Assembly: GCA_950097015.1 (NCBI GenBank)
Contig: CATNEN010000001.1
Span: forward strand, 9,982,001-10,046,000
Length of the DNA stretch: 64,000 bases
DNA from: Macrostomum hystrix
Lineage: Eukaryota > Animalia > Platyhelminthes
Direction: 5' to 3'
Below the pieces are notes generated by a model. It made no database searches. It saw nothing but the letters and a program-made list of their open reading frames with translations, and was not told the origin of the DNA. Made by a program: the position numbers and the translations under genes. Below, one piece after another: positions 39,901 to 63,125 of this stretch. Each line of letters begins with the position of its first letter. The stretch's first letter is position 1.

Positions 39901-40480
39901 GCTGGAGTATTAAGTTTGCTCACAAGGACTCTATAATAGCCGCTTCCGCTTCTTGCCTTCCCTAAAGATTCCGTGGCCGGGACGATGGCTGCGTCAGCGC
40001 TGGTGTCAGCTGACTGGCAACTGGGAGAGTGCGGCATGGCTGTCAGCCAGTGTCCCAATGCCCAGCGTGCTGGCCATGTGGAGCTTCAACCAGCAGCTCG
40101 CCGACTTGCGTGACAACTTCATGAACCGCTGGCGAGATGACAAATTAGACGCAGTCCTGTGTCCGGCTGTCGGTTGTCCCGCCGTTCACCTGGAACCAAA
40201 GGAACAGTTTATAGGCTGCCTAAGCTACCTGGTGTTGTACAATCTGATCAACTTCCCAGCTGGAAGTGTGCCCGTAGGCAGAGTATCATCGGCTGACGTC
40301 GCTGCCATGTCAACTTATCCTGTTGGCAAATCTATCAGCCATGCCAGCGTGGCTAGAATGCAGCCGGGCAGCGAAGACCTTCCAGTGAGTGTGCAGTGCG
40401 TTGCCCTGCCGTGGCGCGATGAGACATGCCTGCGACTCATGCGAGAAGTGGAAACTGCCTGGCAAGATCATGACAATTGA
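36990..40480 (+). CDS. faah: Fatty acid amide hydrolase-like amidase (amidase signature family), ~594 aa, 2 exons
   Basis: Exons 36990-38261 and 39968-40480, phase 0, GT-AG. Lys-Ser-Ser catalytic motifs GLPVSVKE, PGGSSSGE and GTDIGGSIRLPAAWCG; FVRTGVPQ; RIGYY; C-terminal YNLINFPAGSVPV and LPVSVQCVALPWRDETCLRLMREVE as in FAAH1. Start codon inferred. Confidence 0.9.
38418..39138. repeat. 23-bp minisatellite (aaggatctagaagagatcactct)n in the FAAH intron
   Basis: ~31 tandem units; variants are polarised (ctagaa, then ccagaa/ctatat, then ctacat). Confidence 0.95.
39600..39880 (-). repeat. Copy of the dispersed repeat family (probable second SINE family)
   Basis: Reverse complement matches 47119-47340: gggggcttgtcgtgcaatttacgc...cagtgagagtgtacactgcc.gacgatgag..tcagggcagatgtacacacctgtgtgagtgtgtgcct. 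Confidence 0.8.
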
Positions 40481-44170: not shown

Positions 44171-47100
44171 ATGCCTCCAAACCTCAAGGCTGCCGCAGCT
44201 GTACTTCACGACTATGGTCAGCGGTCGACGCTTCATGGCCTCAGCCACATGCACCAGAGCGGCGATCCGTGGCGCCGCGCCTTCTGGGTGATCCTGACTT
44301 TCGGAGGCTGCGCCGCCTGCTTCTACCATACTTACGCTACCATCCTGAACTACCTGGAGTCGCCCATCACAAGCATCTTCCGTGACGAGGGCGTCCCGGC
44401 TGGCTTTCCCGACGTAACTATCTGCAATCTGAAGCCTGTGTCAGAGACGCTGCTGCACACTCCGTCAGAACGGCATCTGCTGTTCCAGCACCTGGAAACC
44501 AACTGGAACTTCTTCCGGAACTGGCTGCCCGAGGAGCGAAAGCGTCGAGTCAACGAGACTCGCGTCGATTACAAGCTGCGTCAGAGGGAGCTGTTCAAGA
44601 CCTATATGGACGTGTTCTGGGCAACCGATGACACCAGAGACTTTGGTCAGAGCGATCTGTACATGCTGCTGTCGTGCATTTACAAAGGCCGTCCTTGCAA
44701 CAGCGCCAGCCTCAAGCTGATTCAGCACAATCGCTACTGGAATTGCTACACCTTTCTGCCTCCTGCAAGCGATAGAAGCATCGACAGCAGTGATCAGAAT
44801 AGTGGACTCCAGCTGATCCTGTTCACAGACTCGAACTTTGACTCCGACAGACTCAATGACCAGGTGCAGTACCTGCGCAAAAAACGCACCAATGAAGAGA
44901 TGAGCGATCCCTACGATCTAATGGAGTATCTGAGCTTTGGTGACAGAACCATGAACCAGGTTCTCACAGGCAATAGTTGGGAGGCCGAGGGCTTGCGCAT
45001 TTTCGTCAACCGGGATGGCCAGCATCCAATGACTGCCGGACTGGCTTTCGATATTTCAAGCGGCGCCTCAACCACAATAGAATTCTCTGAGGTGCAGGTG
45101 AATGCGCTTAATAGCCCACCGGAGCACGTGTGCAACGAGAAACCCGCGGAGGAAATCTGTTATGTGCGATTCTTTGGAGACGGTGCAACGAGGACTGGCT
45201 ACAAAACCTATAGCCTGACCCAATCCCTAGCTGTGATTGAGGCCAAACAGAGCTATGTGTACGACAAATGCAGCTGCTACTCTCACCTGTTACCGTTTCG
45301 TCACAACACCTCCCAGTTGTGCCTGTTCGCACAGCTTGGCGAACGTCACCGGCCAACACAGGCGCTGCTGGACAGACTTCGCTGCCATGCGGCTGCCTAT
45401 CGAGAGGCCGAGAGTCGAACCGCCGACCTCATGAAGAAGATGGAGTCCTTCACACCGTGTGTCAACTGGAAGCTGCACGCGACCAAAGCTGAGGTGCCCT
45501 GGCCGCGAGCTGACGAATTGATTGATTTTATCAATTATATCGTAATACCTCGCTTCATTGAGCCGGAGAACGACGGAACATCCCGAATGCATCACCTGCT
45601 GGGCAGTTCCAACTCGAGTCGTGGCCAATCAGTGCTTAGAAATCTGTTCAACTCGAGCTGCAGGCCGGGCGGTGCCAATGCCAGCCTGGAGGACGCGTGG
45701 TGCCTCTCCAAACACAAACTCGTCTCCAATGTGGCCAGGGTGTGGATCAAACCGGACTCACCCAGGGCTGCGGTTTACCTGGAGGATTACAGCTACGACT
45801 GGCCCGAGGCGCTTAGCGAAATCGGTGGCATATTCGGACTGTGGATGGGTGAGGCTCGTGAGTGCGCTTGTAGCCCAATGGTCCGGAGTTCCAATTCAGT
45901 CCAAAGGAAGCTACTCGTATTTATAACTCTAAGCAAGACAGTTAACTTGAAGAGGTGATCGGCAGAGGGGGTAACGCGTTTGACTCTCGCAACAAGGTCC
46001 CTGAGCCCGAGACAATTTTAATTTGGGGCGCAGCCACCGATAGTACTTGCAGTTATAGAATTAATTAAAAAATGTAATTAATTATAAATAAAATAAAATT
46101 TATATTATCAGTATTATAAGACACTTAACGGCCGTTGCCTTCACCCCATCCAGCTGCAAAATGGGTAGCTGCATCAGCTGTGGTAAAAACTGTGCTGGTT
46201 GTTGCAGCCTCCGCCGCCCTTTGGACTGCGCCAGCGCTACTGGCTTTACATCTACCTAGTTGATAATGTAATTTGCGATGAAGGTTCATTAGTTTTTTAA
46301 GTGCCTTACTTAAGTGCAGTAAGTATAGCCTATTTCGTCTTATTTAAGTAGGGATTATATCTGGAGTCAGGAGTGATGACGAAGACGAACCAAGGAGAGC
46401 GAATCCACGCTGTCAACAGTTTCTTTTAATCCGAACCCAAAGTGGATGCTGTTTATTCAGGTGACACAAGTGACGGAAGTCGCAAACCTATTAGTTGGGC
46501 CCAGTTTTCAACTAACCAATCTAGCCAGGATGCAAAACTGATATGCGCAGAACACGCCAGCAAAACAGAATCGTGTGACTCCAGTCTGAAGGTCAGGACA
46601 GAAAGATGCTTTGAAAAAACATCACCTAGCTGTCTAGCTATAGTTTGGTTACTGCCAGTGGCACAAACATTGGGGTCAGAAATTCCTTAGCAAGTCTGTA
46701 CATTGCCTTTCACCAGCTAAAACTTACGTGTTAAAAAATTAATAGTTAATTCATGCAAAAATCGTATAATCGATGAGACCTATGAAGCAGATTTCAGTGA
46801 CTGACAGAAGATCAGTTGATAATCAAATCTAAGATGTGAGATGCTGTAATTGAATTATTTTTTAGCACTTGAGCACTATACTATAATAGTCCAGACCAAG
46901 TCCACAAGTGTGTTATATCGTTAGTTCTTTATCACAGCAGTTGGCTAACGTGGCTCGTAGTTCGTATTGCGAAAATATAAACCATCCTAATAGAGAGACT
47001 TTCTCCAGAGAAAAGAACCTGTGTCTAAGCTATTAATTTCAGATGGATAGATATTAGATATGACAGCCACCTTGGTAGAGTCAGTGTCACAGCCGCAGCT

Positions 47101-48149: not shown

Positions 48150-50962
48150 GGAAGAGATGAGACAGTGGAGAGATGAGACACATGATAGATGAGACAGGAA
48201 TGAGATGAGACACGGGATAGATGAGACAGTTGAGAGATGAGACAGGAAAGAGATGAGATAGGGGAGAGATGAGACACGGGATAGATGAGACAGTTGAGAG
48301 ATGAGACAGGAAAGAGATGAGATAGGGGAGAGATGAGACAGGGGATAGATGAGACAGATGGGAGATGAGACAGTTGGGAGATGAGACGGGAAAGAGATGA
48401 GACAGGGGAGAGATGAGACAGTTGAGAGATGAGACACGGGATAGATGAGACAGTTGAGAGATGAGACAGGAAAGAGATGAGACGGGAAAGAGATGAGACA
48501 GGGGAGAGATGAGACACGGGATAGATGAGACAGATGGGAGATGAGACAGTTGGGAGATGAGACGGGAAAGAGATGAGACAGGGGAGAGATGAGACACGGG
48601 AGAGATGAGACAGTAGAGAGATGACACAAGGGAGAGATGAGACACGGGAGAGATGAGACACGGGAGAGATAAGACACGGGAGTTATGAGACAGGAAAGAG
48701 ATGAGACAGGGGACTGATGAGACACGGGATATATGAGACAGTTGGGAGATAAGACAAGAAAAAGATGAGGCAGGGGAGAGATAAGACAGGGGAGATATGA
48801 GACAGTTGAGAGATGAGACAGGAAAGAGATGAGACAGGGGAGAGATGAGACAGAGGAGAGATGAGGCACGGGAGAGATGAGACAGGAGAGAGATGAGACA
48901 AGGGAGAGATGATACACGGGAGATATGAGACACGGGAGAGATGAGACAGGGGAGAGATGAGACAGTTGAGTGATGAGACAGGAAAGAGATGAGACACGGG
49001 AGAGATGAGACACGGGAGATATGAGACACGGGAGAGATGAGACAGGGGAGAGATGAGACAGTTGAGTGATGAGACAGGAAAGAGATGAGACAGGTTAGAG
49101 ATGAGACAGGGGAGAGATGAGACACGGGATATATGAGACAGTTGGGAGATAAGACAAGAAAGAGATGAGACAGGGGAGAGATGAGACATGGGAGATATGA
49201 GACAGGGGAGAGATGAGACAGGGGAGAGATGAGACAGTTGAGAGATGAGACAGGAAAGAGATGAGACAGGGGAGAGATGAGACAGAGGAGAGATGAGACA
49301 CGGGAGAGATGAGACACGAGAGAGATGAGACAGGGGAGAGAAGAGAAACACGAGAGAGAGATGAGACACGAGAGAGATGAGACAGGGGAGAGATGAGACA
49401 TGAGAGAGATGAGACAGGGGAGAGATGAGACAGGGGAGAGATGAGACACGGGATATATGAGACAGTTGGGAGATAAGACAAGAAAGAGATGAGACAGGGG
49501 AGATATGAGATAGGGGAGAGATGAGACAGGGGAGAGATGAGACAGGGGAGAGATGAGACAGTAAAGAGATGAGACAGGAAAGAGATTAGACAGGGGAGAG
49601 ATGAGACAGAGGAGGGATGAGACACGGGAGAGATGAGACAGGAGAGAGATGAGACAAGGGAGAGATGATATACGGGAGAGATGAGACACGGTAGAGATGA
49701 GACAGGGGAGAGATGAGACAGGGGAGAGATGAGACAGTTGAGAGATGAGACAGGAAAGAGATGAGACAGGGGAGAGATGAGACAGGGGAGATATGAGATA
49801 GGGGAGAGATGAGACAGGGGAGAGATAAGACAGGGGATAGATGAGACAGTTGAGAGATGAGACAGGAAAGAGATGAGACAAGGGAGAGATGAGACAGAGG
49901 AGAGATGAGACACGGGAGAGATGAGACACGAGAGAGAGATGAGACACGAGAGAGATGAGACAGGGGAGAGATGAGACACGAGAGAGATGAGACACGAGAG
50001 AGATGAGACAGGGGAGAGATGAGACACGAGAGAGATGAGACAGGGGAGAGATGAGACAGGGGAGAGATGAGACTGGGGAGAGATGAGACAGGGGAGAGAT
50101 GAGACAGGGGAGAGATGAGACAGGGGAGAGATGAGACAGGGGAGAGATGAGACAGGGGAGAGATGAGACAGGGGAGAGATGAGACACGGGAAAGAGATGA
50201 AACACGGGAGAGATGAGACAGGGGAGAGATGAGACAGGGGAGAGATGAGACAGAGGAGAGATGAGACAGGGGAGAGATGAGACAGGGGAGAGATGAGACT
50301 GGGGAGAGATGAGACAGGGGAGAGATGAGACAGGGGAGAGATGAGACAGGGGAGAGATGAGACAGGGGAGAGATGAGACAGGGGAGAGATGAGACAGGGG
50401 AGAGATGAGACAGGGGAGAGATGAGACTGGGGAGAGATGAGACAGGGGAGAGATGAGACAGGGGAGAGATGAGACAGGGGAGAGATGAGACAGGGGAGAG
50501 ATGAGACACGGGAAAGAGATGAAACACGGGAGAGATGAGACAGGGGAGAGATGAGACAGGGGAGAGATGAGACAGGGGAGAGATGAGACAGGGGAGAGAT
50601 GTGACAGGGGAGAGATGAGACAGGGGAGAGATGAGACAGGGGAGAGATGAGACAGGGGAGAGATGAGACAGGGGAGAGATGAGACAGGGGAGAGATGAGA
50701 CAGGGGAGAGATGAGACAGGGGAGAGATGAGACAGGGGAGAGATGAGACAGGGGAGAGATGAGACAGGGGAGAGATGAGACAGGGGAGAGATGAGACAGG
50801 GGAGAGATGAGACAGGGGAGAGATGAGACAGGGGAGAGATGAGACACAGGAGAGATGAGACAGGGGAGAGATGAGACAGGGGAGAGATGAGATAGTGTAG
50901 AGATGATACAATGGAGAGATGAGAAAAGGAGCAGAAAATGCATGAGATAGATAAGACAGGAG
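48150..50962. repeat. 16-bp minisatellite (gagatgagacagggga)n, ~2.8 kb
   Basis: Purine-rich tandem array, heterogeneous at left and homogeneous at right; source of the 962/635/441-aa pseudo-ORFs. Confidence 0.97.
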
Positions 50963-51231
50963 ACGTAAACGCAGGGTTTTTTTTACTATAAAAATTATGC
51001 ACAGTTTTTGTATTTCATATTGGAACTTGCGCTATCGCTTAAGTAACTTCTTACGTTATTTTCAAAGATCGTCGCGCTTATGCCAATGTACTTACAAGTT
51101 TTCCACGCAGGATATCCTTGATAAAACTGATATGTTTATAGCTCTTCATCAAAGTTGCAGTTTGACCAAGTCACTTTTGTAAATGTAAAGACTTTCACTT
51201 GAATTTCGATGTTAATTTCACACAGACAGAA

Positions 51232-51815
51232 GTATAGAATAATACCCCCCCTGATTTGGCCTAGGAAAGGCTGAGGACGCGTTTCTTGGCCGAGGCGAAG
51301 CCGAGGTCCAGAAGCGCAGTGCGAAGCCGTTCCAAGGCCATAGACAACGATTTCAGAGGGGTATTATAGTATTTAATCCTAAAGCTTGGCCCGGCTCACG
51401 AGATTGCAAACCTAAAACTGTTTATAGCAACTGTGACCATAGACTATATGTTTAATCGGCCTAGGCCGTTAAATCATTTAACCGCCTAGGCCGATTAAAT
51501 AATAAATGCACAGAATTAATAGCCAATAGGCCAATAGCCAATAGCCAATAGGCCAAGCTGGGGATTAAGTATAAGTTATCACCCACTTTTTTTATTTATT
51601 TTGGCCGGGAACGGCTGAGGACTCGTTTATTGGCCGAGGCCAATAGATAAGTCAAACAAGTGGGTGATAATGTATTTATTCCACAGTTGAAGCCAGATAA
51701 TTGTCACCGGACCAGATTAATGTTTATCTGTCCCGGCCAGATAAATTTCAACGGCCAAAAAAATAAATTTATCTGGTCTATGGGCCAATCCAACTGGGGA
51801 ATAAATAAGGCTATA
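51232..51815. mobile_element. Two adjacent hairpin-rich non-autonomous elements (ccgaggcgaagccgagg type, possibly Crypton-like)
   Basis: Nested inverted repeats: ataatacccccctga/tcagaggggtattat; palindrome tttaatcggcctaggc..gcctaggccgattaaa (51451-51499); ttatcacccactt/aagtgggtgataa; tatttattcc..agttg/caactggggaataaata. The motif ggctgaggac.cgttt.ttggccgaggc occurs twice. Confidence 0.5.
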
Positions 51816-52395
51816 AGTAAAAATGGCAATCGAACTGCTCACATTTTCGAGTATCGAGACAGAATGACAAATTGGGGGTTCCCCATTTGTAAGGGCAAAT
51901 TATTATTATTATTAAATCATTTCGCATTGGAAAATATCCAAAAGAGATTCTATGTAATCATATACGCTATACGAGCTACATTACTGTAACACGGTTTGCA
52001 GAAAGAATCAGAGAAACATTGCAGAGGATAATTCAAACATTCCAATTCAGTTAGGCGACCGTGGCCAGAAATCAAGGCAAGGTTTAGTGTGCTCAGATCA
52101 AACTTGCTTCCCGACAAGATCATGGTGAGCTCAGGTTGAGCTCTCTTGTGAGACGGCTGTTGTTCTCTGCTAGGTCGCATTGAGGAGAGTTCTAGATAAT
52201 AAATACAGACTCAGACTGTATCAGACTAAATGTTGCGACCCGCCCAGTCCCCCGCGGCACTCAAATCAGGCCAACTCTGCGAGGGGAGTGCCAGAATTTT
52301 TTTAGAATGTGTTTTAGACGAGCTCTGCCAAGTTTGATTAAAAAGCAAATTAGCACGGCAAACCAAACAGTGCGCGGTGTTGACCTGAGCGACTG

Positions 52396-55300
52396 TCAGA
52401 AGAGGAGATGAGCACCGAGTCGGGACTGATCGCTGCTCTCCAAGATGACTCGATGCTCCTTGACGAGCTTCTCAGCCTCAGCTCGGCAGAAGTTACGGTG
52501 TTCCTCCCGCGAACTGTACCAAGCCAAGGTCAGCAGCTCTTCCAGGTCGGGGTATGTCAGCAGCTCTTCGCGCCACTGGTTCGCAGCCTCCTCTTTCAGG
52601 CCAAAAAATTCGGCTTGCAAGCTCCAGGACAAGCACCGGAAGTTGATGTAGATGTGAGACGACTGCAGCTGCTCGGACAGTCTAGCGGTGAGCAGACTCT
52701 GTGTAAACTCTGGCAAAAAGTTCAAATTAAGTGGAAAGTCCAAAGTCCAGCTCGGAATGCAGAAGCGCCAAGCCCAATCTGAGCTGTCATCCTGTTCGAT
52801 GCCGAGTCGAATTGAGTCCGGATGCCAGCCTCGTTTCACATTGTGACCATTCAAGTCTAGCAGTAGAGCTCTAGCTTCATCAGCCCGATCAAACTTCAAG
52901 CAAGTCATCGCCTTCAGACACACGGCAGCGGACTTGCAAGTGTCTGGCAGCTCATTCAGTTTGCTCATGATTTGCTGGAAAGTGCTTCGGCCGCTAAACA
53001 GTTCTAGCAGAGTGTGCTCAACAGTCTGGTATAACTTGCCGAGTTGGCTCGCTCCAAACTCTGCTGTCTCTGGTCTAAAAGTACTTCGCCGAGGACTCAA
53101 TGGAAGCCAGGTGAACGGATGAAAGTGCAGCAAATTGGTTTGGAGTGGCTGCAAGAAATTAAATAGGTCATGGAAGACGAGCCAGATGTTGTTGTGCAGA
53201 TGGTCTAGCTCATTTCTGACGCGCTGTTTGCAGGCCTCCAAGCCCACAACCTCAGCATCTTTGACGTAAAGCCAGCACTCTCGCAAAAACGGGTGAGGCA
53301 TTGCTTTTTTATTTGAGTCGCTCTTCGCATCTAGGAAGGCTATCATCAGGCGCAGGGCCTCTCGGAACAGTTGTACTAAGTTCTCCGTCTGCCAGACAGT
53401 CTCACCGTCGCTACTGTGCCTTTTTAGCATGTGAAGCAACAGTGACTTGGCGTGGTAGCTCTTCAGGCCGAATCCGATTCTCTTCCTGAAGGTGAACTTT
53501 ATCAGCACAAACAGGTGGCCCTGCGTGTCATTCAGCTCCCTGATTTGTCGTCTTTCCCAGCAGTTTGAGCTGATTCGCAGCTCCCTCGAGCGGCCAGGAC
53601 GCACCGCCCTGACGAGACTCTCGGGATGGTAGATCAGGAGTGCGGACTCAGGACCCTGGCAGCAGGGAAAGGCGAAGCACAGGTCTGTCTGTGGACGAAC
53701 CCCGCATGCAGGCGACGTCAGCGCCGGCTGAGAGCCTGCAAATGATCAATAAGTTCAATAAACTGAACCGAATAATCAGATAATCAGCAATGCAGCAGCT
53801 AATAGAGTTTCAAGCCTTGATTTCTACACCTGCTGCTGCAGATACAAAATAATATAGGCGTGACTGTTGCGCCTGTTAATAGAAGCACTTTGCTGTTCAG
53901 TCTTACCATCTGAAACTGGAACTTGAGCGTAGCCGTCCTCGACTCGCAGCAGCTGGACAGTCGTGTCATCGCACTTGCAGTATCCTTCCAAGTGATAGGG
54001 GTGACGATCGATTACAAGCGTCCAATCGATGTCTGAGTCGACTGGAACTCTGCCATCAACTCTGTGCGGAATAATTCCCCAGACCTCTGAGAAGCTGCCA
54101 GCAACGATGATGTTTTCCCCAGTCACCGTCTTTGCCAGCTTTGACATGAAGTCCGCCATGCAGGCAAGACCTGTCATTCGCTGTGTCGTGAAGCCCGACT
54201 GCACTAACACTTTTGCCAACGCTTGGCTCTTCTCGACATCGTATCGCCAAAGGTCGAAGCTCGACCGAGCACTGAAAGTCGGTAAAAAACTAAGTGAGAA
54301 ATGGGCTTATAAAAAGTGCAGGATAACAACTCATTGTCATTCAGAATTAGGCAGAAAAAGCAATACGCAATGTTCTGAAGCGGTACAAAGCAGTGTGCTC
54401 ACCAAAGAGTGCTCAGAATGTTGCTATGGTTTCTTTGTTCCGCCAAATTGGCACAGCTTCTGTCCTTGTGGTCGCGATGATTGATGTCGGAGCCCAGCCT
54501 GAGGAGTTCTTGAACAGCACACGCGTGACCCTTGATGCACGCCCATGAAAGAGCGGTGAAGCCATGCTTGTCGATGCGGGTGACGGATGCCCCGTACTCT
54601 ACAAGGTTTGGAAGGAATGTGTGCTGTCCGTGCTTCGCTGTCATCATCAGTGCAGTTAGGCCGCTCTCGTCAGGTTCGTCCACGTCGACGAGATGTGGCA
54701 GCAGCTCCAATGCCAGACCAATATTTCCATTCGGAATGCACTGAAAGATTAGCTTCAACAGCAGACTAGGTTGCATCTGACGCAACAGTTTTTCATAGTT
54801 CAGAGGTCGGGGGTTATTCATTGTGAAACGGTTCAGCATTAGCACCAGCTCCTTGTTCTCAACAATCATGGATGCACAAATTGGGAGCTTCTCGCATAGA
54901 TGAAGTGCATTCGCATCTTTCATAACATTTAACGCTTCATGCAAATAGAGTGACTTCATCGAAGCACTGATCGTAGACTCCAGAACTTCGCCTATCACTG
55001 TGACCTCGCTGGCCCTTACGAGGAGCGGCAGGATGACCACGCAGCATTTGTAGCGCTCCTCCTCACTACTAATCTGATGAAAAAACGCACCGATGCATCG
55101 CCAATGATTCAGTTTGGCAGACTGTTCGTGAGCCTTGCGGAAGCTTTCATCTCGCATTGAATAGTTGGAGAGCTGCTTCACAATGCTCGATAGGCTGAGG
55201 ATGCTTCTGTGGTCGCTATCGCGAGTCCATGCAGCAATTTGACTGTCAACAGTTGATAAGCAATACCTGTCCCTGGCAGTGCTATTAGCCATTGACGCAA

Positions 55301-58300
55301 TTATGTTAACTGCGTGATCAAATTGTCCCAGTTGAATAGCCCAGTCAGCAACTCGAGCACGGTGGCCATCAACAAGTTCAAAACGGAAGTCGCCTATCGA
55401 TTGGAAGAACTGTGCTGCTTCTAACAACCTCTCTTGTTCGAACACCAAGTCAAGTGCTGCATGAAGGCAATGGTCTGCCACTGTCACCTCAACCAAACCT
55501 TTGATGAGTTCAGCAGCCCTTCTAGTTGAACCCTGTCGGATCATTTGCCTCGTCTGATCAGCGCAAAAGCATGCCTTCGAGTTCTGATCCCACAGTCCAT
55601 TAATGAATCGATGTGCAGATGCCAGCAAGTCCATATTGAGACTCACCGCTGCTGCTAACTTGCAGTACTTGTTCCTCAGTTGTTTATCAGGGCCAAGCAT
55701 CTCAAGCGCTTCGATCCAGACAGCTGGTTGGATACTTCGGACAAAGTATTCAAGGTGTTGGCCATTTTTATCAGTGCGAGACAAAAGAATGGCTTCGATG
55801 AGACAAACGGACTGCAAGTCGTCTGACAAGGTAGAAAGGAAGCGGCAAGCTTGATTTGAGCAGCCATGCTCAACTGCTGTCCTCACGGCATAGATACAAC
55901 AGTTCCTGTACATTTGAGAGTCGTCAGTAAAGGATAGTATGACTCCAACAGTAGCCATGTCTCCGATAGAAGCTGCACCATGGACTCCGACGAGCGGCTT
56001 TGGAAATTCCAACTGAGTCGCAATCTTAACGCAGCACTGTCTTCTGATGTGCGCATCTCGAATGTCACCAAGAACTGACTTTGCAAGGTCTAGGTAGCCG
56101 CCTCTTGCTGCCAGTATGGCACACTTTGAAGCTGTTGTGTCTCGCGCCAGCTCATTGTCTGCTAGGCACAGAAGAATTCGCTGAGCCTTCTCTAAGTGCC
56201 CACCAGAAGCAGCAATTTTTGCCTCTTTCACGCACCATTTATTCCTAATTCTGCTTTCACTAATCATTCCAACTGTTTCGCAAGCTTCATCCACATGACC
56301 TGTACTGACCTCTTCGCTGGCTTTTGTGCAGAAGCAATAATCTAGGTTTAGAGTTGCAATCGAGCTCCAGTTAGGGTCGGGTGAGAGTTTGGTTCTTGAG
56401 CACCACCTGATCGCTTCGCTTGTGTTTTTTATGCTGCGCACAAAGAGAGTCACCATCTCATCTTGCCTGCAATCCAGCGCGAACTGTGCAGCATCCAGCA
56501 GGCATCGTGTCTGCTCTTCTGCATTAGAAATGCTTTCGGCTACGACCTTAGCATTGTGCCAGAGCCGTCGACTAAAGAGCAGCTTTGCAGTATGAATTCG
56601 GAGGCCGTCCTTCAGCCTGGGCTCGTCGGTGTCATCCAACAAAGACTGAAAAATCGGCAGTAGAATTCCTGTTCGCTGAGCCTCCACTTCCAGTGGGCTT
56701 GCATTGCAGCACTTCATTCCTTCGTCTGGCTGCTCAGCGTGCTGCATTTCAACTACCTGCGCTGTCTGCTGCTCGGCAGGGCAACACCGAGTGCACTGAT
56801 CACAGGTGTGAATTATTGTGCGCCAGCTAATCGATACTCTCAGTCCGGTTGGCATCGCCATTAAAAGCTGGTTAGTGCAATTTCTGCAGCTTGATATGCT
56901 ACTCAGAGCGCTGTCTAAAACGCTTTGCTTTCTAGCCAAACCAGAAGCCTTTGAAATCACTGCAGCCGTCTCTGGCCAGTTTCCATGCTCAGCCGCAATC
57001 TTTGCTAATTTTTCGCAAAAGGAATCAATCAAGTTACCTGAAACTCTTAATTCAACCCATCTTGCCATTATACTGCTTGCAGTTTGCCAGTTTTTCTTTC
57101 GGGCCGCAGCCAATACCGACATCTCGAAGCAGCTATCGCGAGCTCTTTGAGTGTTGAGGCGGCCAAAGAAGTCTAGAAAGATCTCAAAATGACTCATGGA
57201 GGCTGCTAACTTGGCAGTTTCACAGCATCTGCAAATCCTGACTTGTGCGTCAGTGCTTTGGTTGAAGCTCAGACTCCAACATTCATTGGCTAATTGTTGC
57301 CAGCCCTTGAGGGCTGAGAGAAGAACTAGATTCCAGCAGTGCTCTTTCCTGGTGTCATCGTTGCTGATTTCTTGAAGTAGACGCACTGCAGTAGTGATAT
57401 TTTCGGAACTAATAGCTTCTTGAGCCACTCGAATCAGAGCCTGGTCTCTCAGTGAAGTCACTTGGATCCCGTTGAGTAGCCTGAGAGTCGAGAATGTTAA
57501 CAGGAATTCGGTTAGTTAGCTTTTGCGGCAAAACAGTCCAGTACATTAGCATGCTTTCATGAATGAATTCGGCCGACGTCGTGTCCTGTGGAAGATCGCA
57601 TTCTATTAAAAACCGATTAATGACTTCTGTCGATTTGTTTACAGCGGTAACCAAAAGTAAAGAGGTGGATACTTTTTGACCTTCAGTCACCCTTACGTGC
57701 TTCCTTCTAGTAGTCTTTGTTCTCATCACTGCAGCCAAGCAAACCAATGCGTCGATTGTAATCCAATGAGTTACTGGGAAACTATTTCAGAACTATTCAG
57801 AACTCAAGAACTATTTGACAGAAGTCATTAATCGGGTTTTAATAGAATGCGATCTTTCACAGGACACGACGTCGGCCGAATTCATTCATGAATTTACTTG
57901 TAATTTACTCGAAAGACGAATTCTACGGTGTGACAAATTGTACGGCAATAAACTTGGGCTAAGCTAAAAGTCTCGCGCATTTGAAAGCGTTTGCTCTCAA
58001 CTCACCTCAAAGCGTATTCTTCATACTCCGTCATTTTTACTGCCTTCAGTGCCAGATCCACAATGACTTCCGGCTGACCTTCAGGCAGCAAGCACCAATC
58101 TAGGAGTTGTCGTTGACCCAGTTTGAAGCCGCCATCGTTCAGCACAGACCGGCTGATGTCGCCAATGCATCTCTCCTGGATCTGACGATCTCTAATCGCT
58201 GCAACTATGGTCGCCGGTTCAAGTCTCACAGATGACAGCGAATCGATTCGAGTTGTGCCTTCGCTGTTAAGCTCAACTTCCGGCAGGCACGCAGACAAGT

Positions 58301-58343
58301 TGCTGCGGCCTGTGCAGATGTCCTCCACGATGCTTGTGTTCAT
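52396..58343 (-). CDS. Helical-repeat + ankyrin + Mab-21/cGAS-like (cGLR) nucleotidyltransferase fusion protein, ~1706 aa, 4 exons
   Basis: Exons 58343-58006, 57480-54403, 54271-53907, 53735-52396; GT-AG, phases 2/2/1 consistent (5121 nt). Ankyrin repeats GLTALMMTAKHG and GFTALSWACIKGH. NTase core IIVAGSFSE...DSDIDWTLV...TDLCFAFPC. Mab-21 C-lobe ELRISSNCWERRQI...FVLIK...LKSYHAKSLLLH...W..ENL...MPHPFL. Start codon uncertain (possible acceptor near 58380). Confidence 0.82.
57556..57892. mobile_element. MITE/foldback element with 76-bp near-perfect inverted arms in intron 1 of the cGLR gene
   Basis: 57556-57631 ttcatgaatgaattcggccgacgtcgtgtcctgtg...aatgacttctgtc is the reverse complement of 57817-57892 with only a few mismatches. 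Confidence 0.8.
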
Positions 58344-58811
58344 CGAGTGGCGTTGACAATACCCGGCCACGGTGGAGCCCTTGTTGAAGATAATTTTTAT
58401 ATTAATAGTTTCACGCAAAATTTAAGCAAAATGCATGCAGTGGTGCAGTGGTTAGTTAAGTACTTTTGAAAGCATTGCGTCAGCTCCAGTTTCAGCTGCC
58501 AATTAAAACACCAAGAAAACTGCCAAGACAAACAGTTTGTTTATCTTCAAAAATTAACTTAAATGTGTTGTCCAGCCAATTTTGGCTAGTAAAAACAGGA
58601 TATATTTTATTTCTCAGAACAAGCGTACCTTACAAGACAAATTTAAGAGGCTTCTAAGTAGGAGAAAGTCATCGCTGAAGCTTAAGAAGTCCAGGTAATG
58701 CCACTTTAATTTTGCGGCGGGTTTCAAATATACGGATAGCGTTTCGTTGATTTGTTCCTTTTAACTTGCGCAAAATGTTCCAAGACTTTTTTTACTTTTA
58801 GACAAACTGTG

Positions 58812-59100: not shown

Positions 59101-62100
59101 TTAGCACCAAATGCACCATTCAGGGACTTTGCAATCGCTGTCAACATTCGTCCAGCCTGTAGGAGTATAAAAATGTTAAATTTGCAAGTAAAACGGAAGT
59201 TCTAAAAATAATTTTCTACGAATTGACCCTTTTAAAGAGGTTAGGCTGAGAACGGCTTCTCAGGGTAAGAGTTGTCAGAGACAGGGGGTTGTCAGGGTGA
59301 GAGTTGTCAGAGACAGGGGGCTGTCAGTGAGAGAGTTGTCAGAGACAGGGGGTTGTCAGGGTGAGAGTTGTCTGAGACAGGGGGTTGTCAGGGAGAGAGT
59401 AGAGATAGACAGTTTGTCAGGGACAGAGCGGTTTCAGTGTGAGGGTTGTCAGTTCAGGGTCGCCAGAGAAAAGCCAGCTGTCAGAGGAGGTTCGCACCAT
59501 CGAGGCAGACTTTGTCGCCGTCAGCTGAGCAGCGGTAGTGTCCATTATTGTCGTCATTATATGGGACGCATTTATTTTCGCACAGAGGTCCGTATTGATT
59601 GGCCTTACACTTGAACTGATAGTTTACCTGCAGTCTGTTGCAGGATGTGAAATCGGATGCTAATTTTTAGAAAAGCATGACTGACTGATCAGTGCGACTA
59701 GTTACTCGTAATTGGCTCAAGCAGGACGCTTACGTGCGATCCGCAGTCGAGCCGGTCAAGGTGCGATTCTGCTGGGTTCTCACAGGCTCCAGCATCAGGA
59801 CGAAGATGTCCATCAGTTGTTTCTGTTCGCCGCTCCTTTCGTCATGTTCGACGGTTACTTTGAGAAAGATATGCTTCTGAAAGCAAGGAGAAAGGCGAGA
59901 TGATTGACTGTGACAAAATCTTACTGTCCAAGCTAAACAATGCGAGAAACACTTACTAAGTCATTCATTCGAACCTCGCAAACAATGGGATTTCTCATGG
60001 CACCGATAGTTCCGTTGAATTCGATGAACTTCTTATCCGGCGGCGTGTCTCCAATTTTATATTCATTTGTTTGCCGATAATTCAAGTTCTTCAATCTGGG
60101 GAGCGGGTGTTTCAGCGCACTCTGATCGATGTGAGACACAATATAGTTACTAGAGTCAAGTAAGTAGGGCTTCTTTTAGAGAACTTAGCGGAAGTAAGAT
60201 CACTGATTTATAAAGTAACGCAATAAGAACTAATGCTGAGTAAAGTAGCGGAAGTAGGAATACTGAATAAAGTAATAAGTAATAAAGTAATAAAGTAGCG
60301 GAAATATGATTAGTGATAGATAAGGTAGCGGAAATATGATTAGTGACAGATAAAGTAGCGGAAATATGATTAGTGATAGAAAAAGTAGCGGAAATATGAT
60401 TAGTGACAGATAAAGTAGCGGAAATATGATTAGTGTTAGATAAAGTAGCGGAAATATGATTTGTGTTAGATAAAGTAGCGGAAATATGCTCAGTGATAGA
60501 TAAGGAAGCGGAAATATGATTAGTGATAGAAAAAGTAGCGGAAATATGATTAGTGACAGATAAAGTAGCGGAAATATGATTAGTGCTAGATAAAGTAGCG
60601 GATATATGATTAGTGACAGATAAGGTAGCGGAAATATGATTAGTGACAGATAAAGTAGCGGAAATATGATTAGTGACAGATAAAGTAGCGGAAATATGAT
60701 TAGTGATAGATAAAGTAGCGGAAATATGCTTAGTGATAGATAAGGTAGCGGAAATATGATTAGTGACAGATAAGGTAGCGGAAATATGATTAGTGACAGA
60801 TAAAGTAGCGGAAATATGATTAGTGACAGATAAAGTAGCGGAAATATGATTAGTGATAGATAAGGTAGCGGAAATATGATTAGTGACAGATAAAGTAGCG
60901 GAAATATGATTAGTGATAGATAAAGTAGCGGAAATATGATTAGTGACAGATAAAGTAGCGGAAATATGATTAGTGATAGATAAAGTAGCGGAAATATGAT
61001 TTGTGTTAGATAAAGTAGCGGAAATATGATTAGTGATAGATAAAGTAGCGGAAATATGATTAGTGACAGATAAAGTAGCGGAAATATGATTAGTGATAGA
61101 TAAAGTAGCGGAAATATGATTTGTGTTAGATAAAGTAGCGGAAATATGCTTAGTGACAGATAAAGTAGCGGAAATATGATTAGTGATAGATAAGGTAGCG
61201 GAAATATGATTAGTGTTAGATAAAGTAGCGGAAATATGATTAGTGTTAGATAAAGTAGCGGAAATATGATTAGTGTTAGATAAAGTAGCGGAAATATGAT
61301 TAGTGTTAGATAAAGTAGCGGAAATATGCTTAGTGATAGATAAGGTAGCGGAAATATGATTAGTGATAGATAAAGTAGCGGAAATATGATTAGTGACAGA
61401 TAAAGTAGCGGAAATATGATTAGTGATAGATAAAGTAGCGGAAATATGATTAGTGACAGATAAAGTAGCGGAAATATGATTAGTGACAGATAAAGTAGCG
61501 GAAATATGATTAGTGATAGATAAAGTAGCGGAAATATGATTAGTGTTAGATAAAGTAGCGGAAATATGATTAGTGTTAGATAAAGTAGCGGTTTTAGAAT
61601 TGCTAACGGATAAATGATTGCAACCAGGAGTACCAATTATTAATAGCAGGGACTATTAAATAAAAGAGCCACTAAAATGCACAAGTACAATGAAAATTAA
61701 CGTTCCGTTACCCATCGTTGGATTCGCGAATAACTTCAAAGCGAAACACGGCGTTGCACTTGAGTTTCTTGTTAGTGGGCGACAGACTGACGATGCTGCA
61801 CGGCTCTCCATTGACCAGAGCGAGATTGGGATTTTCGTAACGAATTATTTCAATTTTCAAGTCCGAGCTGATTATCGACTCCCTGGCGCAGTCTGGCCCA
61901 CCCGACTGGCCCTGACGATACAGGGTTTGGGAAACTGATTCTCTACATTGGCGAACACCCATTTTAAGCGTTTCAATATGCAATCAGGCCGCCATAGGAC
62001 GCCAGAACCTACTTGGTTTGATGATTGAACAGCTGAAACTAGCCTTGCAGAGATGAGACAGGGGGAGATGAGACACGGAAGAGATGAGACACAGGAGAGA

Positions 62101-63125
62101 TGAGACACTGGAGAGATGAGACAGGGGAGAGATGAGACACTGGAGAGATGAGACACAGGAGAGATGAGACACTGGAGAGATGAGACAGGGGAGAGATGAG
62201 ACACGGGAGAGATGACGCACGGCATAGATGACACACGGCATAGATGAGACACGGCAGAGATGAGACACGGCAGAGATGAGACAGGGGAGAGATGAGACAC
62301 GAGAGAGAGATGAGACAGGGGAGAGATGAGACACGGGAGAGATGAGACAGGGGAGAGATGAGACAGGGGAGAGATGAGACAGGGGAGAGATGATCGACAG
62401 GGGAGAGATGAGACAGGGGAGAGATGATCGACAGGGAAGAGATGAGACAGGGGAGAGATGATCGACAGGGGAGAGATGAGACAGGGGAGAGATGAGACAG
62501 GGGAGAGATGAGACAGGGGAGAGATGAGACAGGGGAGAGATGAGACAGGGGAGAGATGATCGACAGGGGAGAGATGAGACAGGGGAGAGATGATCGACAG
62601 GGGAGAGATGAGACAGGGGAGAGATGAGACACAGGAGAGATGAGACAGGGGAGAGATGAGACAGGGGAGAGATGAGACAGGGGAGAGATGAGACACAGGA
62701 GAGATGAGACAGGGGAGAGATGAGACAGGGGAGAGATGAGACAGGGGAGAGATGAGACAGGGGAGAGATGAGACAGGGGAGAGATGATCGACAGGGGAGA
62801 GATGAGACAGGGGAGAGATGATCGACAGGGGAGAGATGAGACAGGGGAGAGATGAGACAGGGGAGAGATGAGACAGGGGAGAGATGAGACAGGGGAGAGA
62901 TGAGACAGGGGAGAGATGAGACAGGGGAGAGATGAGACACAGGAGAGATGAGACAGGGGAGAGATGAGACAGGGGAGAGATGAGACAGGGGAGCATATTT
63001 AAGCATATTTAAAAGACATTTCTTATGGAGACGGACTAATGCACTTGTCCACTTACATGAGCAGCTGATATCCAGAACAGAGCGCTGATAACTAAGACAG
63101 AGTATTGAAAGGAGAGGGCCCGCAT
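59101..63125 (-). CDS. Secreted Delta/Serrate-like Notch ligand: signal peptide + C2/MNNL + DSL only, ~265 aa, 6 exons
   Basis: Exons 63125-63057 (MRALSFQYSVLVISALFWISAAH), 61911-61712 (LKIEIIRYENPNLALVNGEPC...C.AVFRF), 60149-59957 (NPIVCEV), 59876-59734 (IFLKVTVEHD...LMDIF), 59634-59498 (VNYQFKCKANQYGPLCENKCVPYNDDNNGHYRCSADGDKVCLDG), 59156-59101 (WTNVDSDCKVPEWCIWC*). All GT-AG and in phase (798 nt). Six-Cys DSL signature complete. Confidence 0.85.
59262..59425. repeat. ~33-bp degenerate minisatellite (gttgtcagagacagggggttgtcagggtgaga) in the last DSL intron
   Basis: 3-4 tandem units. Confidence 0.75.
60290..61591. repeat. 30-bp minisatellite (taaagtagcggaaatatgattagtgataga)n in DSL intron 2
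   Basis: ~43 exact-length units; source of the spurious 468-aa hydrophobic ORF. Confidence 0.97.
62049..62992. repeat. 16-bp minisatellite (gagatgagacagggga)n in DSL intron 1
   Basis: Same unit as 48150-50962, plus 17-bp gatcgac variants. Confidence 0.97.

What the first reader, a model, noticed from the sequence alone, without database searches (positions are those of the whole stretch)
52396..58343. Giant cGAS-like receptor: ~1000-aa helical-repeat solenoid + ankyrin repeats fused to a catalytically intact Mab-21 NTase
Seen: four separately listed ORFs splice in phase into one ~1706-aa protein. Order is an N-terminal helical-repeat region, 3-4 ankyrin repeats, an NTase core (hGS, DIDWT, and a third Asp in TDLCFAF), the Mab-21 C-lobe (ELRIS..E, LKSYHAK, PHPF) and a ~250-aa C-terminal helical extension. 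Established: Mab-21-fold cGLRs with these acidic residues make cyclic dinucleotide second messengers in animal innate immunity, and some invertebrate cGLRs carry ankyrin or TPR fusions. Inference: this is a sensor-enzyme receptor whose solenoid and ankyrin arm may detect a protein ligand rather than nucleic acid, i.e. NLR-like logic wired to a cGAS-type output.
Basis: partly seen in the sequence, partly recalled or inferred. Interest (0 to 1): 0.82.

Follow-up and report, generated by a model that had tools for sequence, protein, structure and literature searches.

The report
Flatworm ankyrin-arm cGAS-like receptor gene
This is a real, intact four-exon flatworm gene for a 1,706-residue protein that joins a long, decayed ankyrin-type helical arm to a cGAS-like signalling enzyme with its catalytic residues in place, but it is one of more than 100 such genes in this genome and the fusion class is already catalogued.

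Summary
Four minus-strand exons (58343-58006, 57480-54403, 54271-53907, 53735-52396) join in phase at GT-AG sites into 1,706 codons. A transcript-derived Macrostomum lignano protein (PAA72057.1, 1,676 aa) matches all four exons collinearly.

The enzyme part belongs to the cGAS/Mab-21 (cGLR) fold family. A family profile hits only cGLR, cGAS and MAB21L1 among solved structures. A confident model of a 41-43% identical relative superposes on oyster and coral cGLRs (Z 15.2 and 13.7). The G-S, D-x-D and third-Asp motifs are present.

The "solenoid" is real: about 22-24 helical hairpins, then four canonical ankyrin repeats. It is probably not a separate repeat type. Part of it aligns in register with Pfam-recognised 33-residue ankyrin arrays of paralogues, so I read it as a degenerate ankyrin array.

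The genome matches the published M. hystrix assembly in size and contig count. It holds at least 95-140 related loci and about 12 divergent STING-like genes.

Li et al. 2023 already list M. lignano ankyrin-cGLRs, and the two whose entries I read are not flagged active. Two other reports of this scan found the same family in this genome. Product, ligand and the NLR-like logic remain untested. Verdict: a new member of a known kind, of moderate interest.

The parts
58006..58343 (-). Exon 1 (ATG 58343-58341; 112 codons plus 2 bases), an N-terminal region with no known domain.
   Evidence: Sequence read. The donor GTGAGT starts at 58005. P0090 residues 2-105 match 58334-58011 at 38.5% identity. Pfam finds nothing.
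57481..58005 (-). Intron 1 (525 nt). It holds an 84-bp inverted duplication at 57556-57639 and 57809-57892.
   Evidence: GT...AG ends read. The inverted self-matches were seen (query 6357-6440 and 6610-6693, 94% identity, opposite strand).
54810..57480 (-). Exon 2, arm (exon-2 residues 1-890). It is all-alpha, with about 22-24 hairpins of a 17-residue and a 9-residue helix, period about 33-37 residues. I read it as a degenerate ankyrin-type array.
   Evidence: AlphaFold2 on exon 2: mean pLDDT 79.2, helices only. Foldseek puts ankyrin-B (24 repeats, 4rlv) among the top hits with 882 aligned columns. Self-comparison by hhalign matches 5-499 to 317-829 at 85% probability. The arm is 31% identical over 1,057 columns to P0090. 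No relatives were found outside Macrostomum.
56010..56342 (-). The part of the arm (exon-2 residues 380-490) that is demonstrably homologous to the ankyrin-type 33-residue repeats of paralogues.
   Evidence: phmmer gives 18 in-register alignments to the 1,809-aa repeat exon of the paralogue at C1:13.85 Mb, with i-E down to 6.8e-12. Pfam scores that exon as Ank_2 at E 3.4e-161 over 32 stretches. Many further own-genome hits fall on the same query range.
56685..56825 (-). A Cys-rich, predicted-disordered insert in the arm (exon-2 residues 219-265). It is flanked by C-x2-C motifs that are also present in the M. lignano orthologue.
   Evidence: pLDDT is below 50 at residues 219-228 and 233-265. 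A zinc-binding role is inference only.
54405..54797 (-). Exon 2, four canonical ankyrin repeats (exon-2 residues about 895-1025). Pfam Ank_2 covers 54489-54761.
   Evidence: Ank_2 at E 1.5e-14, 54.8 bits, residues 907-997. Helix pairs at 895-1024 with pLDDT around 90.
53907..54271 (-). Exon 3, the first part of the NTase N-lobe: spine helix, G-S (54099-54094) and D-S-D-I-D (54039-54025).
   Evidence: Sequence read. There are 140 own-genome matches. G-S plus D-x-D is kept in 56 of 60 sampled paralogues and in about 66 of 73 matches among the stored relatives, mostly M. lignano. The exon matches P0016 residues 110-216, which lie in the cGLR-fold part of the model.
53140..53735 (-). Exon 4, first about 198 residues: the strand with the third catalytic Asp (53685-53683), then the Mab-21 C-lobe (Pfam Mab-21_C at 53404-53595, with the LRIS, KSYHAK and PHPF motifs).
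   Evidence: The third Asp is kept in 9 of 9 paralogues read. The family profile hits Sp-cGLR1 8gjy at E 1.9e-4, then cGAS and MAB21L1 only. The model of P0016 has its cGLR fold at residues 101-429; these correspond to exon 4 up to about residue 198 by the alignment.
52396..53139 (-). Exon 4, the family-specific C-terminal extension (about 247 residues, mostly helical with two short strands) and the stop codon at 52398-52396.
   Evidence: In the P0016 model, residues 430-690 lie outside every cGLR or MB21D2 superposition yet have pLDDT of roughly 80-95. The extension is conserved to query residue about 439 in more than 45 paralogues.
51978..58397 (.). The extent of the 6.4-kb segment duplicated 308 kb away (G000:C1:10342022-10348419, 99% identical). 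It is essentially the gene alone.
   Evidence: The alignment shows that the other copy carries a 22-bp deletion at window 56805-56826, which shifts the frame in exon 2. The window copy is the intact one.

Best explanation
The locus is one intact gene of a flatworm. The genome matches the published Macrostomum hystrix assembly in size and contig count.

The gene encodes a 1,706-residue cGAS-like receptor (cGLR) family protein with these parts, in order:
- A short N-terminal segment.
- An arm of about 890 residues made of degenerate ankyrin-type helical hairpins.
- Four canonical ankyrin repeats.
- A Mab-21/cGAS-fold nucleotidyltransferase with the G-S, D-x-D and third-Asp active-site motifs.
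- A family-specific C-terminal domain of about 247 residues.

Shown here: the gene structure, its conservation as one collinear protein in M. lignano, the fold family, the presence of the catalytic motifs, and membership in an expansion of more than 100 genes.

Inferred: the repeat arm acts as a ligand-binding or regulatory surface. Binding switches on the transferase, which makes a nucleotide second messenger. That messenger is read by the divergent STING-like proteins encoded elsewhere in the genome. The nature of the ligand and of the product is unknown.
For: Gene model:
- Canonical in-phase GT-AG junctions and 1,706 codons with no internal stop.
- Four collinear tblastn matches of PAA72057.1 coincide with the four exons.
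- That M. lignano annotation comes from an RNA-seq-guided transcriptome assembly (PMC5730564).
- Exon 2 is 31% identical to it over 1,057 columns, E 2e-141.

Fold:
- The family profile hits only cGLR, cGAS and MAB21L1 in the PDB.
- AlphaFold2 of P0016 gives pLDDT 86.8. P0016 is 41% identical to exon 4 at E 3e-92 and also matches exon 3.
- Foldseek's top 50 hits for that model are all cGAS, Cv-cGLR1 or MAB21L1, with E from 3.5e-7.
- VIA-align gives Cv-cGLR1 Z 15.2 (268 residues aligned, rmsd 3.6), MB21D2 Z 14.0 and Sp-cGLR1 Z 13.7.

Catalytic motifs: they are present in the window and kept in 56 of 60 sampled paralogues, in 9 of 9 for the third Asp, and in about 66 of 73 matches among the stored relatives, mostly M. 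lignano.

Arm.

Family size: 95 exon-4 matches, 140 exon-3 matches and 103 Mab-21_C loci.

Possible receptor: about 12 STING_LBD-like genes.

Precedent: Li et al. 2023 list M. lignano proteins as cGLRs, some with Ank_2.
Against: - No expression data for this gene in this species were available to me.
- The canonical Pfam Mab-21 N-terminal model (PF03281) does not match, and Mab-21_C is borderline (23-25 bits).
- The fold was modelled on a 41-43% identical relative, not on the window protein itself, because the enzyme is split over two exons and the joined model was not to be folded.
- The two M. lignano family members whose entries I read in the Li et al. biochemical screen (#89, #90) carry no 'active' note. 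Catalysis in this family is therefore undemonstrated.
- The STING-like genes score just under Pfam's cut-off (25 vs 27 bits).
- Only about 110 of the 890 arm residues show significant sequence similarity to ankyrin-type repeats. The modelled hairpins (17 + 9 residues, no beta-hairpin finger) differ from canonical ankyrin.
Confidence: 0.72

Rival explanations
1. The protein has the cGAS fold and its motifs but is not a second-messenger synthase. It would act as a scaffold or nucleotide-binding adaptor, as proposed for MAB21L1 and MB21D2, with the ankyrin arm mediating protein interactions.
For: MB21D2 is among the best structural matches (Z 14.0). The M. lignano relatives #89 and #90 in the Li et al. 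screen are not flagged as active. The PF03281 model does not match.
Against: G-S, D-x-D and the third Asp are retained in the window gene and in more than 90% of sampled paralogues across a large, otherwise fast-diverging family. That argues for selection on catalysis. The best structural and profile matches are active invertebrate cGLRs. Most cGLRs in that screen were inactive without their unknown ligand (PMC9980059).
Confidence: 0.2
2. The N-terminal arm of about 890 residues is an independent, novel TPR-like solenoid. Only residues 380-490 would be borrowed from or convergent with ankyrin-type repeats.
For: Pfam finds no Ank in residues 1-890. The helix lengths (17 + 9) and the lack of beta-hairpin fingers are TPR-like. 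TPR solenoids (IFT-A, Ski3, Ctr9) are also among the Foldseek hits. No BLAST self-similarity was found.
Against: There are 18 in-register alignments to a Pfam-certified ankyrin array. The 33-residue register, with the G-H or G-G turn between the two helices, is the ankyrin one. The arm runs without a break into canonical ankyrin repeats. Paralogues carry ankyrin arrays at the same position. Ankyrin-B aligns over 882 columns. No Pfam TPR model matches.
Confidence: 0.2
3. The four exons are not one gene. The ankyrin ORF and the transferase exons would be neighbours joined by chance in-phase sites.
For: No transcript evidence from this species was examined.
Against: The transcript-derived M. lignano orthologue runs through all three junctions without a gap, and the residues at the junctions are conserved. 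Ank followed by exon-3-like and exon-4-like segments occurs in that order in dozens of M. lignano proteins. The exon 3/4 intron position is identical in 9 of 9 paralogues. The duplicated 6.4-kb unit spans exactly ATG to stop.
Confidence: 0.03
4. The window copy is a decaying or unexpressed duplicate in a fast birth-and-death family and has no present function.
For: Its 99% identical twin has a frameshifting 22-bp deletion. The two copies differ by 21 non-synonymous and 11 synonymous changes, which suggests relaxed constraint on at least one of them. The gene sits between satellite arrays and a dispersed repeat.
Against: 5,121 nt are open with intact splice sites and catalytic motifs. Full-length collinearity with an orthologue from another species at 31-48% identity implies long-term purifying selection on the lineage.
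Confidence: 0.07

Closest known systems
Macrostomum lignano PAA72057.1 (BOX15_Mlig024769g1, 1,676 aa, 'hypothetical protein')
   Same: It is a collinear orthologue over the whole length. It shares the N-terminal segment, the arm (31% identity), four ankyrin repeats, the NTase (46-48% identity) and the C-terminal extension.
   Different: It is from another species and is uncharacterised. I did not find it in the parts of the Li et al. tables that are held.
Ankyrin-repeat cGLR fusions catalogued by Li et al. 2023 (PMC9980059; e.g. M. lignano PAA67649.1 and PAA58690.1 in Table S2, and Stylophora pistillata ANK-cGLRs)
   Same: The domain logic is the same: an ankyrin array N-terminal to a cGLR nucleotidyltransferase with a predicted active site. 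The M. lignano entries share motifs with this family (G-S-F-A-E-x-W-G, D-x-D-V/W), judged by eye from the sequence excerpts; no alignment was run.
   Different: Here most of the array has diverged beyond Pfam recognition and has lengthened first helices. There is also a conserved C-terminal domain of about 247 residues that is not part of the cGLR fold.
Cv-cGLR1 (8gjw) and Sp-cGLR1 (8gjy), active invertebrate cGLRs
   Same: They are the best non-ankyrin structural matches to the family model (Z 15.2 and 13.7, about 267 residues aligned). Sp-cGLR1 is also the best profile hit (E 1.9e-4).
   Different: They share about 14-15% identity only. Both are single-domain enzymes without repeat arms or the C-terminal extension. 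Their ligands and products are known, whereas none is known here.
Human cGAS and MB21D2
   Same: They share the bilobal Mab-21 NTase fold (Foldseek E 3.5e-7, TM about 0.5-0.58 on the target; MB21D2 Z 14.0) and the S/T-Y-H-x-K C-lobe motif.
   Different: No cGAS-type zinc thumb was identified at the cGAS position. Instead the family has a conserved H-x5-C-x-C motif between the D-x-D strand and the third Asp. There is no evidence of DNA binding.
NLR-type receptors (NACHT or NB-ARC plus repeat arm)
   Same: There is a large, tandemly amplified, fast-diverging family with a repeat arm fused to a signalling module.
   Different: No NACHT or NB-ARC domain is present, and the repeats are ankyrin-type rather than LRR. 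The resemblance is functional analogy only and is untested.

Membership tests
cGLR / Mab-21 (cGAS-like) nucleotidyltransferases | Bilobal cGAS-type NTase fold (spine helix, N-lobe sheet, helical C-lobe). | tested here: met
   This was tested on P0016, a relative 41-43% identical to exon 4 that also matches exon 3, not on the window protein itself. AlphaFold2 gave pLDDT 86.8. Foldseek's top 50 hits are all cGAS, cGLR or MAB21L1. VIA-align gave Z 15.2, 14.0 and 13.7 over about 267 residues.
cGLR / Mab-21 (cGAS-like) nucleotidyltransferases | Active-site motifs: h-G-S, [D/E]-h-[D/E]-h, and a third acidic residue on a later strand. | tested here: met
   G-S is at 54099-54094, D-I-D-W within D-S-D-I-D at 54039-54025, and the third Asp at 53685-53683. 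The columns are conserved in family alignments.
cGLR / Mab-21 (cGAS-like) nucleotidyltransferases | Pfam Mab-21_C (PF20266) over the gathering score. | tested here: inconclusive
   hmmscan gives 23.0 bits against a cut-off of 24.1. The six-frame genome search gives 25.4 bits, over the cut-off. 102 other loci in the genome pass.
cGLR / Mab-21 (cGAS-like) nucleotidyltransferases | Pfam Mab-21 N-terminal NTase model (PF03281). | tested here: not met
   There is no hit on exon 3 or exon 4. The genome-wide search finds only the canonical Mab-21 gene on C24. The model does not reach this divergent clade, and fold and motifs argue for membership regardless.
cGLR / Mab-21 (cGAS-like) nucleotidyltransferases | Sequence-profile similarity to solved family members. 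| tested here: met
   The profile of 15 relatives hits Sp-cGLR1 at E 1.9e-4, cGAS at 3.7e-3 and MAB21L1 at 0.19. Nothing else scores at E below 1.
cGLR / Mab-21 (cGAS-like) nucleotidyltransferases | Ligand-activated synthesis of a cyclic or linear nucleotide second messenger. | not testable with these tools
   This needs biochemistry. The M. lignano relatives #89 and #90 in the Li et al. screen carry no 'active' note.
cGLR-STING pathway | A STING-type receptor encoded in the same genome. | tested here: inconclusive
   There are about 12 paralogues. PF15009 is the only Pfam family hit in 6 of 10 of them, best E 1.4e-5 at 25 bits against a cut-off of 27. Single-sequence PDB hits are all STING; the profile of ten paralogues also hits NEMO coiled coils through the C-terminal tail. 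No fold was predicted.
Ankyrin repeat proteins | Pfam Ank models over threshold, with 33-residue helix-turn-helix repeats. | tested here: met
   For exon-2 residues 907-997, Ank_2 scores 54.8 bits. For residues 1-890 there is no Pfam hit, but residues 380-490 are homologous to a Pfam-certified array and the structure resembles ankyrin-B.
TPR proteins | Pfam TPR models, or 34-residue repeats with the TPR signature. | tested here: not met
   No TPR family appears at E up to 1. TPR solenoids appear only as generic Foldseek matches with TM of 0.15 or less.
NLR (NACHT/NB-ARC) receptors | A central NACHT or NB-ARC ATPase. | tested here: not met
   No such domain is found in any exon, and none appears in the exon-2 model, which is helical repeats throughout.

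The most novel reading that the evidence does not exclude
Macrostomum flatworms belong to a phylum reported to have mostly lost cGLR signalling. They may run a greatly expanded recognition system of more than 100 genes. In it, ankyrin-derived arms of very different length and sequence (from 4 repeats to about 50 or more) serve as variable ligand-binding surfaces for cGAS-like enzymes. The enzymes would signal to a co-expanded set of about 12 divergent STING-like receptors. This gene would be an old, orthologue-conserved member whose arm has evolved into a new helical-hairpin variant of the ankyrin repeat that recognises a protein ligand.
Probability: 0.25. Interest if true: 0.65.

Novelty: new member of a known kind. 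Interest (0 to 1): 0.36.

Why it matters
cGAS-like receptors are a major but mostly ligand-orphan class of animal innate immune sensors. Repeat-fused members are the best candidates for sensing something other than nucleic acid.

This gene adds a well-defined case: it is conserved between species and has a complete set of catalytic motifs. It comes from a tractable flatworm genus, since M. lignano has transgenesis (PMC5730564).

It also shows that a long 'unknown' helical arm can be a decayed ankyrin array.

The family's size, and the presence of STING-like genes, qualify the statement that most flatworms lack cGLR signalling.

None of this changes the known picture of the class. Without a product or a ligand, it remains an annotation-level result.

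Tried and rejected
- **Exon 4 against PDB sequences:** phmmer found nothing useful. The family profile was needed instead.
- **Exon 2 against the 5.8-billion-protein index:** only the ankyrin part found relatives.
- **Same index restricted to residues 1-890:** this found nothing, not even the known orthologue. The blank therefore has little weight.
- **ESM Atlas:** it could not take the window sequence. With the orthologue's arm, all scores were 0.84 or less and gave no lead.
- **BLAST of the arm against itself:** no repeats were found. hhalign self-comparison gave only a moderate signal (85%).
- **An HMM built from 40 near-identical paralogue repeat units:** it was too narrow to detect the window's units, with scores no better than shuffles. 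The reverse search with phmmer worked.
- **VIA-align re-ranking of the Foldseek hits:** the list was filled by ankyrin designs and said nothing about the enzyme. The wide search gave the enzyme ranges.
- **Other NTase classes:** I considered an OAS-like or other NTase class and rejected it, because no such entry appears among the top structural or profile hits.
- **Joined model:** Each exon was handled apart. In one search a script walked the four exons' coordinates only to count codons, stops and synonymous and non-synonymous differences.
Full report
**Observation**

The region holds four minus-strand ORFs. Reading the sequence gives one gene.
- Exon 1 runs from ATG 58343 to 58006 and is followed by GTGAGT.
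- Exon 2 runs 57480-54403, preceded by AG and followed by GTGAGC.
- Exon 3 runs 54271-53907, preceded by AG and followed by GTAAGA.
- Exon 4 runs 53735-52396, preceded by AG and ending in TGA.

The phases fit. The sum is 5,121 nt, or 1,706 codons, with no internal stop.

All searches used the exons apart: exon 2 as window:54405-57479:-, exon 3 as window:53908-54270:-, and exon 4 as window:52399-53733:-. The script walked the exon coordinates only to count codons, stops and substitutions.

**Is it one gene?**

An exhaustive phmmer search of 1.84 billion representative proteins with exon 4 gave 75 hits. All ten that I looked up are from Macrostomum lignano or are unnamed metagenome fragments.

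One cluster member, PAA72057.1 (P0090, 1,676 aa), is collinear with the whole model. tblastn on the window gives four matches:
- Residues 2-105 match 58334-58011.
- Residues 108-1107 match 57479-54405.
- Residues 1112-1208 match 54261-53971.
- Residues 1229-1675 match 53736-52399.

The orthologue's sequence runs through each junction, and the junction residues are conserved. Exon 2 alone is 31% identical to it over 1,057 columns, E 2e-141.

The GenBank annotation of M. lignano was made from an RNA-seq-guided transcriptome assembly (PMC5730564). The orthologue is therefore a transcript-derived single mRNA. Direct RNA evidence for this species was not available to me.

**Organism**

The window's assembly has 220,453,370 bases in 42 contigs. 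That matches the M. hystrix assembly of Wiberg et al. 2023, which is about 220 Mb in 42 contigs (PMC10468722). The nearest public proteins are from M. lignano. I take the organism to be M. hystrix, inferred from these two facts.

**The enzyme**

Sequence evidence:
- Pfam gives Mab-21_C at 23.0 bits (cut-off 24.1) on exon 4 and nothing on exon 3.
- The six-frame genome search scores the locus at 25.4 bits, along with 102 other loci.
- The canonical Mab-21 N-terminal model finds only one gene in the genome, on contig 24.
- A profile of 15 compact relatives (A1) hits only Sp-cGLR1 8gjy (E 1.9e-4), cGAS (3.7e-3 and weaker) and MAB21L1 (0.19) among 177,635 PDB sequences. The alignment runs through the L-K-S/T-Y-H-x-K motif.

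Structural evidence comes from a relative, because the enzyme is split over exons 3 and 4.
- I folded a natural relative that contains it uninterrupted: P0016, 709 aa. It is 41% identical to exon 4 at E 3e-92, and exon 3 matches its residues 110-216.
- AlphaFold2 with 36 family sequences gave mean pLDDT 86.8 and pTM 0.82.
- Foldseek's top 50 PDB matches are all cGAS, Cv-cGLR1 or MAB21L1, with E from 3.5e-7 and target-normalised TM of 0.48-0.58.
- A Foldseek-independent scan gave three enzyme matches:
  - Cv-cGLR1 at Z 15.2 (268 residues aligned, rmsd 3.6, model residues 104-417).
  - Human MB21D2 at Z 14.0 (model residues 101-429).
  - Sp-cGLR1 at Z 13.7 (model residues 103-424).

The window gene has G-S (54099-54094), D-S-D-I-D (54039-54025) and the third Asp (53685-53683). 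The same columns are conserved elsewhere:
- In about 66 of 73 matches among the stored relatives, mostly M. lignano.
- In 56 of 60 sampled own-genome paralogues.
- For the third Asp, in 9 of 9 paralogues read.

So 'Mab-21-fold cGLR-type NTase with intact catalytic motifs' is supported, by homology for the fold and directly for the motifs.

Model residues 430-690 fall outside all cGLR superpositions but are confidently modelled. By the alignment they correspond to exon-4 residues of about 199-445. It is a hallmark of the family, conserved to residue about 439 in more than 45 paralogues. Its fold was not identified.

**The arm**

AlphaFold2 of exon 2, using a shallow alignment of 10 sequences, gave mean pLDDT 79.2 and an all-helical chain.
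- It has about 22-24 hairpins of a helix of about 17 residues and one of about 9 residues, with a period of about 33-37.
- It has a disordered Cys-rich insert at residues 219-265.
- It ends in four canonical ankyrin repeats at about 895-1024.

So a helical-repeat solenoid is there. It has no Pfam match and no detectable relatives outside Macrostomum.

I do not think it is a separate repeat class, for four reasons.
- Own-genome searches showed many paralogues matching exon-2 residues 380-490 repeatedly.
- One such paralogue, at C1:13.85 Mb, has an 1,809-residue exon with about 45 almost perfect 33-residue repeats. Pfam scores it as Ank_2 at E 3.4e-161 over 32 stretches.
- phmmer aligns window residues 380-490 to that array 18 times, always in the same register, with i-E down to 6.8e-12. 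The turn between the two helices (G-G-H-L-E in the window, K-G-H-L-E in the paralogue) is the ankyrin G-H turn.
- Foldseek's second-best match to the exon-2 model is the 24-repeat ankyrin-B solenoid, aligned over 882 columns. hhalign also finds internal similarity between the arm's halves.

The most economical reading is a degenerate ankyrin-type array. In it, the first helix has grown at the expense of the beta-hairpin finger, and the array continues into four still-canonical repeats. I put this at about 0.65. The alternative of an independent TPR-like solenoid is not excluded, because only about 110 of 890 residues show significant similarity.

**Family and context**

Exon 4 finds 95 loci in the genome, exon 3 finds 140, and Mab-21_C finds 103. 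Many lie in tandem clusters on contig 1.
- Of 35 longer homologues from the representative-library search (mostly M. lignano), 27 carry ankyrin repeats and 3 carry a caspase domain.
- The window gene is about 45% identical to its nearest paralogues, but it has a 99% identical twin 308 kb away. The duplicated unit of 6.4 kb is essentially the gene alone.
- The twin carries a 22-bp deletion at window 56805-56826 that shifts the frame. The copies differ by 21 non-synonymous and 11 synonymous changes. The window copy is the intact one.

- PF15009 finds a 337-residue open frame at C2:9104028-9105038, at 25-25.6 bits against a cut-off of 27, covering profile positions 3-145 of 182.
- All 14 single-sequence PDB hits are STING.
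- There are about 12 paralogues.
- A profile of ten of them again hits invertebrate STINGs first, with E about 1e-3.
- 6 of the 10 have STING_LBD as their only Pfam match.

A divergent STING-like family is therefore probably present, but I did not fold it.

**Comparison with what is known**

Li et al. 2023 (PMC9980059) defined cGLRs across animals.
- They state that 87% are stand-alone enzymes but that some carry TPR or ankyrin modules.
- They state that nematodes and most platyhelminths have only Mab21-like proteins.
- Their Table S3 includes five M. lignano proteins cloned for the screen. The two I read (#89 PAA86972.1, #90 PAA45980.1) share motifs with this family by eye and have an empty 'Note' column, where active enzymes are named.
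- Their Table S2 lists M. lignano accessions with Ank_2.

The class is thus catalogued, though no member of this clade has a known product or ligand.

Two other reports of this scan, on other pieces of the same genome (s1-846133 and s1-842795), reached the same view of the family. My own tests agree with them.

**Mechanism**

Shown: the architecture, the fold family, the motifs, and the conservation.

Inferred, from how cGAS and characterised cGLRs work (PMC9980059):
- The repeat arm binds a ligand or holds the enzyme inactive.
- Binding or oligomerisation orders the active site.
- The enzyme joins two NTPs into a second messenger.
- A STING-like protein reads that messenger.

Whether the ligand is a protein is unknown. 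No NACHT or NB-ARC domain exists, so 'NLR-like' is an analogy only.

**Verdict**

This is a new member of a known kind, the ankyrin-fused cGLR, with an unusually decayed and remodelled ankyrin arm and a conserved orthologue. Interest is moderate, at 0.36.

Noticed in passing
G000:C2:9104028-9105038 (L030 1501-2511, minus strand) and about 11 paralogues at C2:8.97-9.10 Mb, C39:4.23-4.25 Mb, C39:19.16 Mb, C38:7.50 Mb and C7:13.14 Mb: A divergent STING ligand-binding-domain-like gene family of about 12 copies. PF15009 is the only Pfam hit in 6 of 10 copies (best 25 bits, cut-off 27). Single-sequence PDB hits are all STING; the profile also hits NEMO coiled coils through the C-terminal tail. Flatworms listed in Li et al. 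2023 Table S5 have no STING, and Macrostomum is not in that table.
   Followed up: partly
G000:C1:10342022-10348419 (L042 1501-7898), compared with window 51978-58397: A 99% identical second copy of the gene lies 308 kb away. It has a 22-bp deletion (window 56805-56826) that shifts the frame in exon 2, so it is probably a young pseudogene. The copies differ by 21 non-synonymous and 11 synonymous changes. An inverted 200-bp fragment of the ankyrin part lies next to it (C1:10341108-10341308).
   Followed up: yes
L104 2857-8283 (G000:C1:13854356-13859782, minus strand): A paralogue has an 1,809-residue single exon with about 45 nearly identical 33-residue Cys-Cys-containing ankyrin repeats (Ank_2 E 3e-161), followed by NTase exons. 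The near-identity of the units suggests very recent repeat amplification or homogenisation.
   Followed up: partly
P0017 (PAA59752.1) and P0095 (PAA80948.1), M. lignano: Relatives have the order cGLR-like NTase, then ankyrin repeats, then a C-terminal caspase domain (Peptidase_C14 at E 2.7e-25). This would be a sensor-enzyme fused to a protease effector, if the gene models are right.
   Followed up: no
window 53980-54000, and the same columns in 60 paralogues: A conserved H-x5-C-x-C motif lies between the D-x-D strand and the third Asp, and a C-C pair follows the third Asp. This may be a zinc site at a different place from the cGAS zinc thumb. Geometry was not checked.
   Followed up: no
window 56685-56890 (exon-2 residues about 198-265): A Cys-rich, low-confidence insert in the arm has two C-x2-C motifs that are also present in the M. 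lignano orthologue. It may be a small zinc-binding module.
   Followed up: no
window 51230-51810: A dispersed repeat of about 300-580 bp with internal inverted segments, downstream of the gene's 3' end, has dozens of copies at 83-95% identity on many contigs. It looks like a non-autonomous transposon.
   Followed up: no
window 57556-57639 and 57809-57892: An 84-bp inverted duplication (94% identity) lies inside intron 1 and is also present in the second gene copy.
   Followed up: no
window 48153-50924, 62049-62993 and 60290-61591: The same 16-bp satellite (AGAGATGAGACAGGGG) occurs 173 and 58 times on either side of the gene, and a 30-bp satellite occurs 43 times. Together these account for the long artefactual ORFs there. 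The 62-63 kb array overlaps the span of another first-stage note (s1-847247).
   Followed up: partly
window 44171-45958 (+), 36906-40480 (+), 5524-6168 (-) and 12442-13092 (-): The neighbouring genes are ordinary: a DEG/ENaC-type channel (ASC, E 6e-42), an amidase in at least two exons, and two tandem VWA-domain exons.
   Followed up: partly
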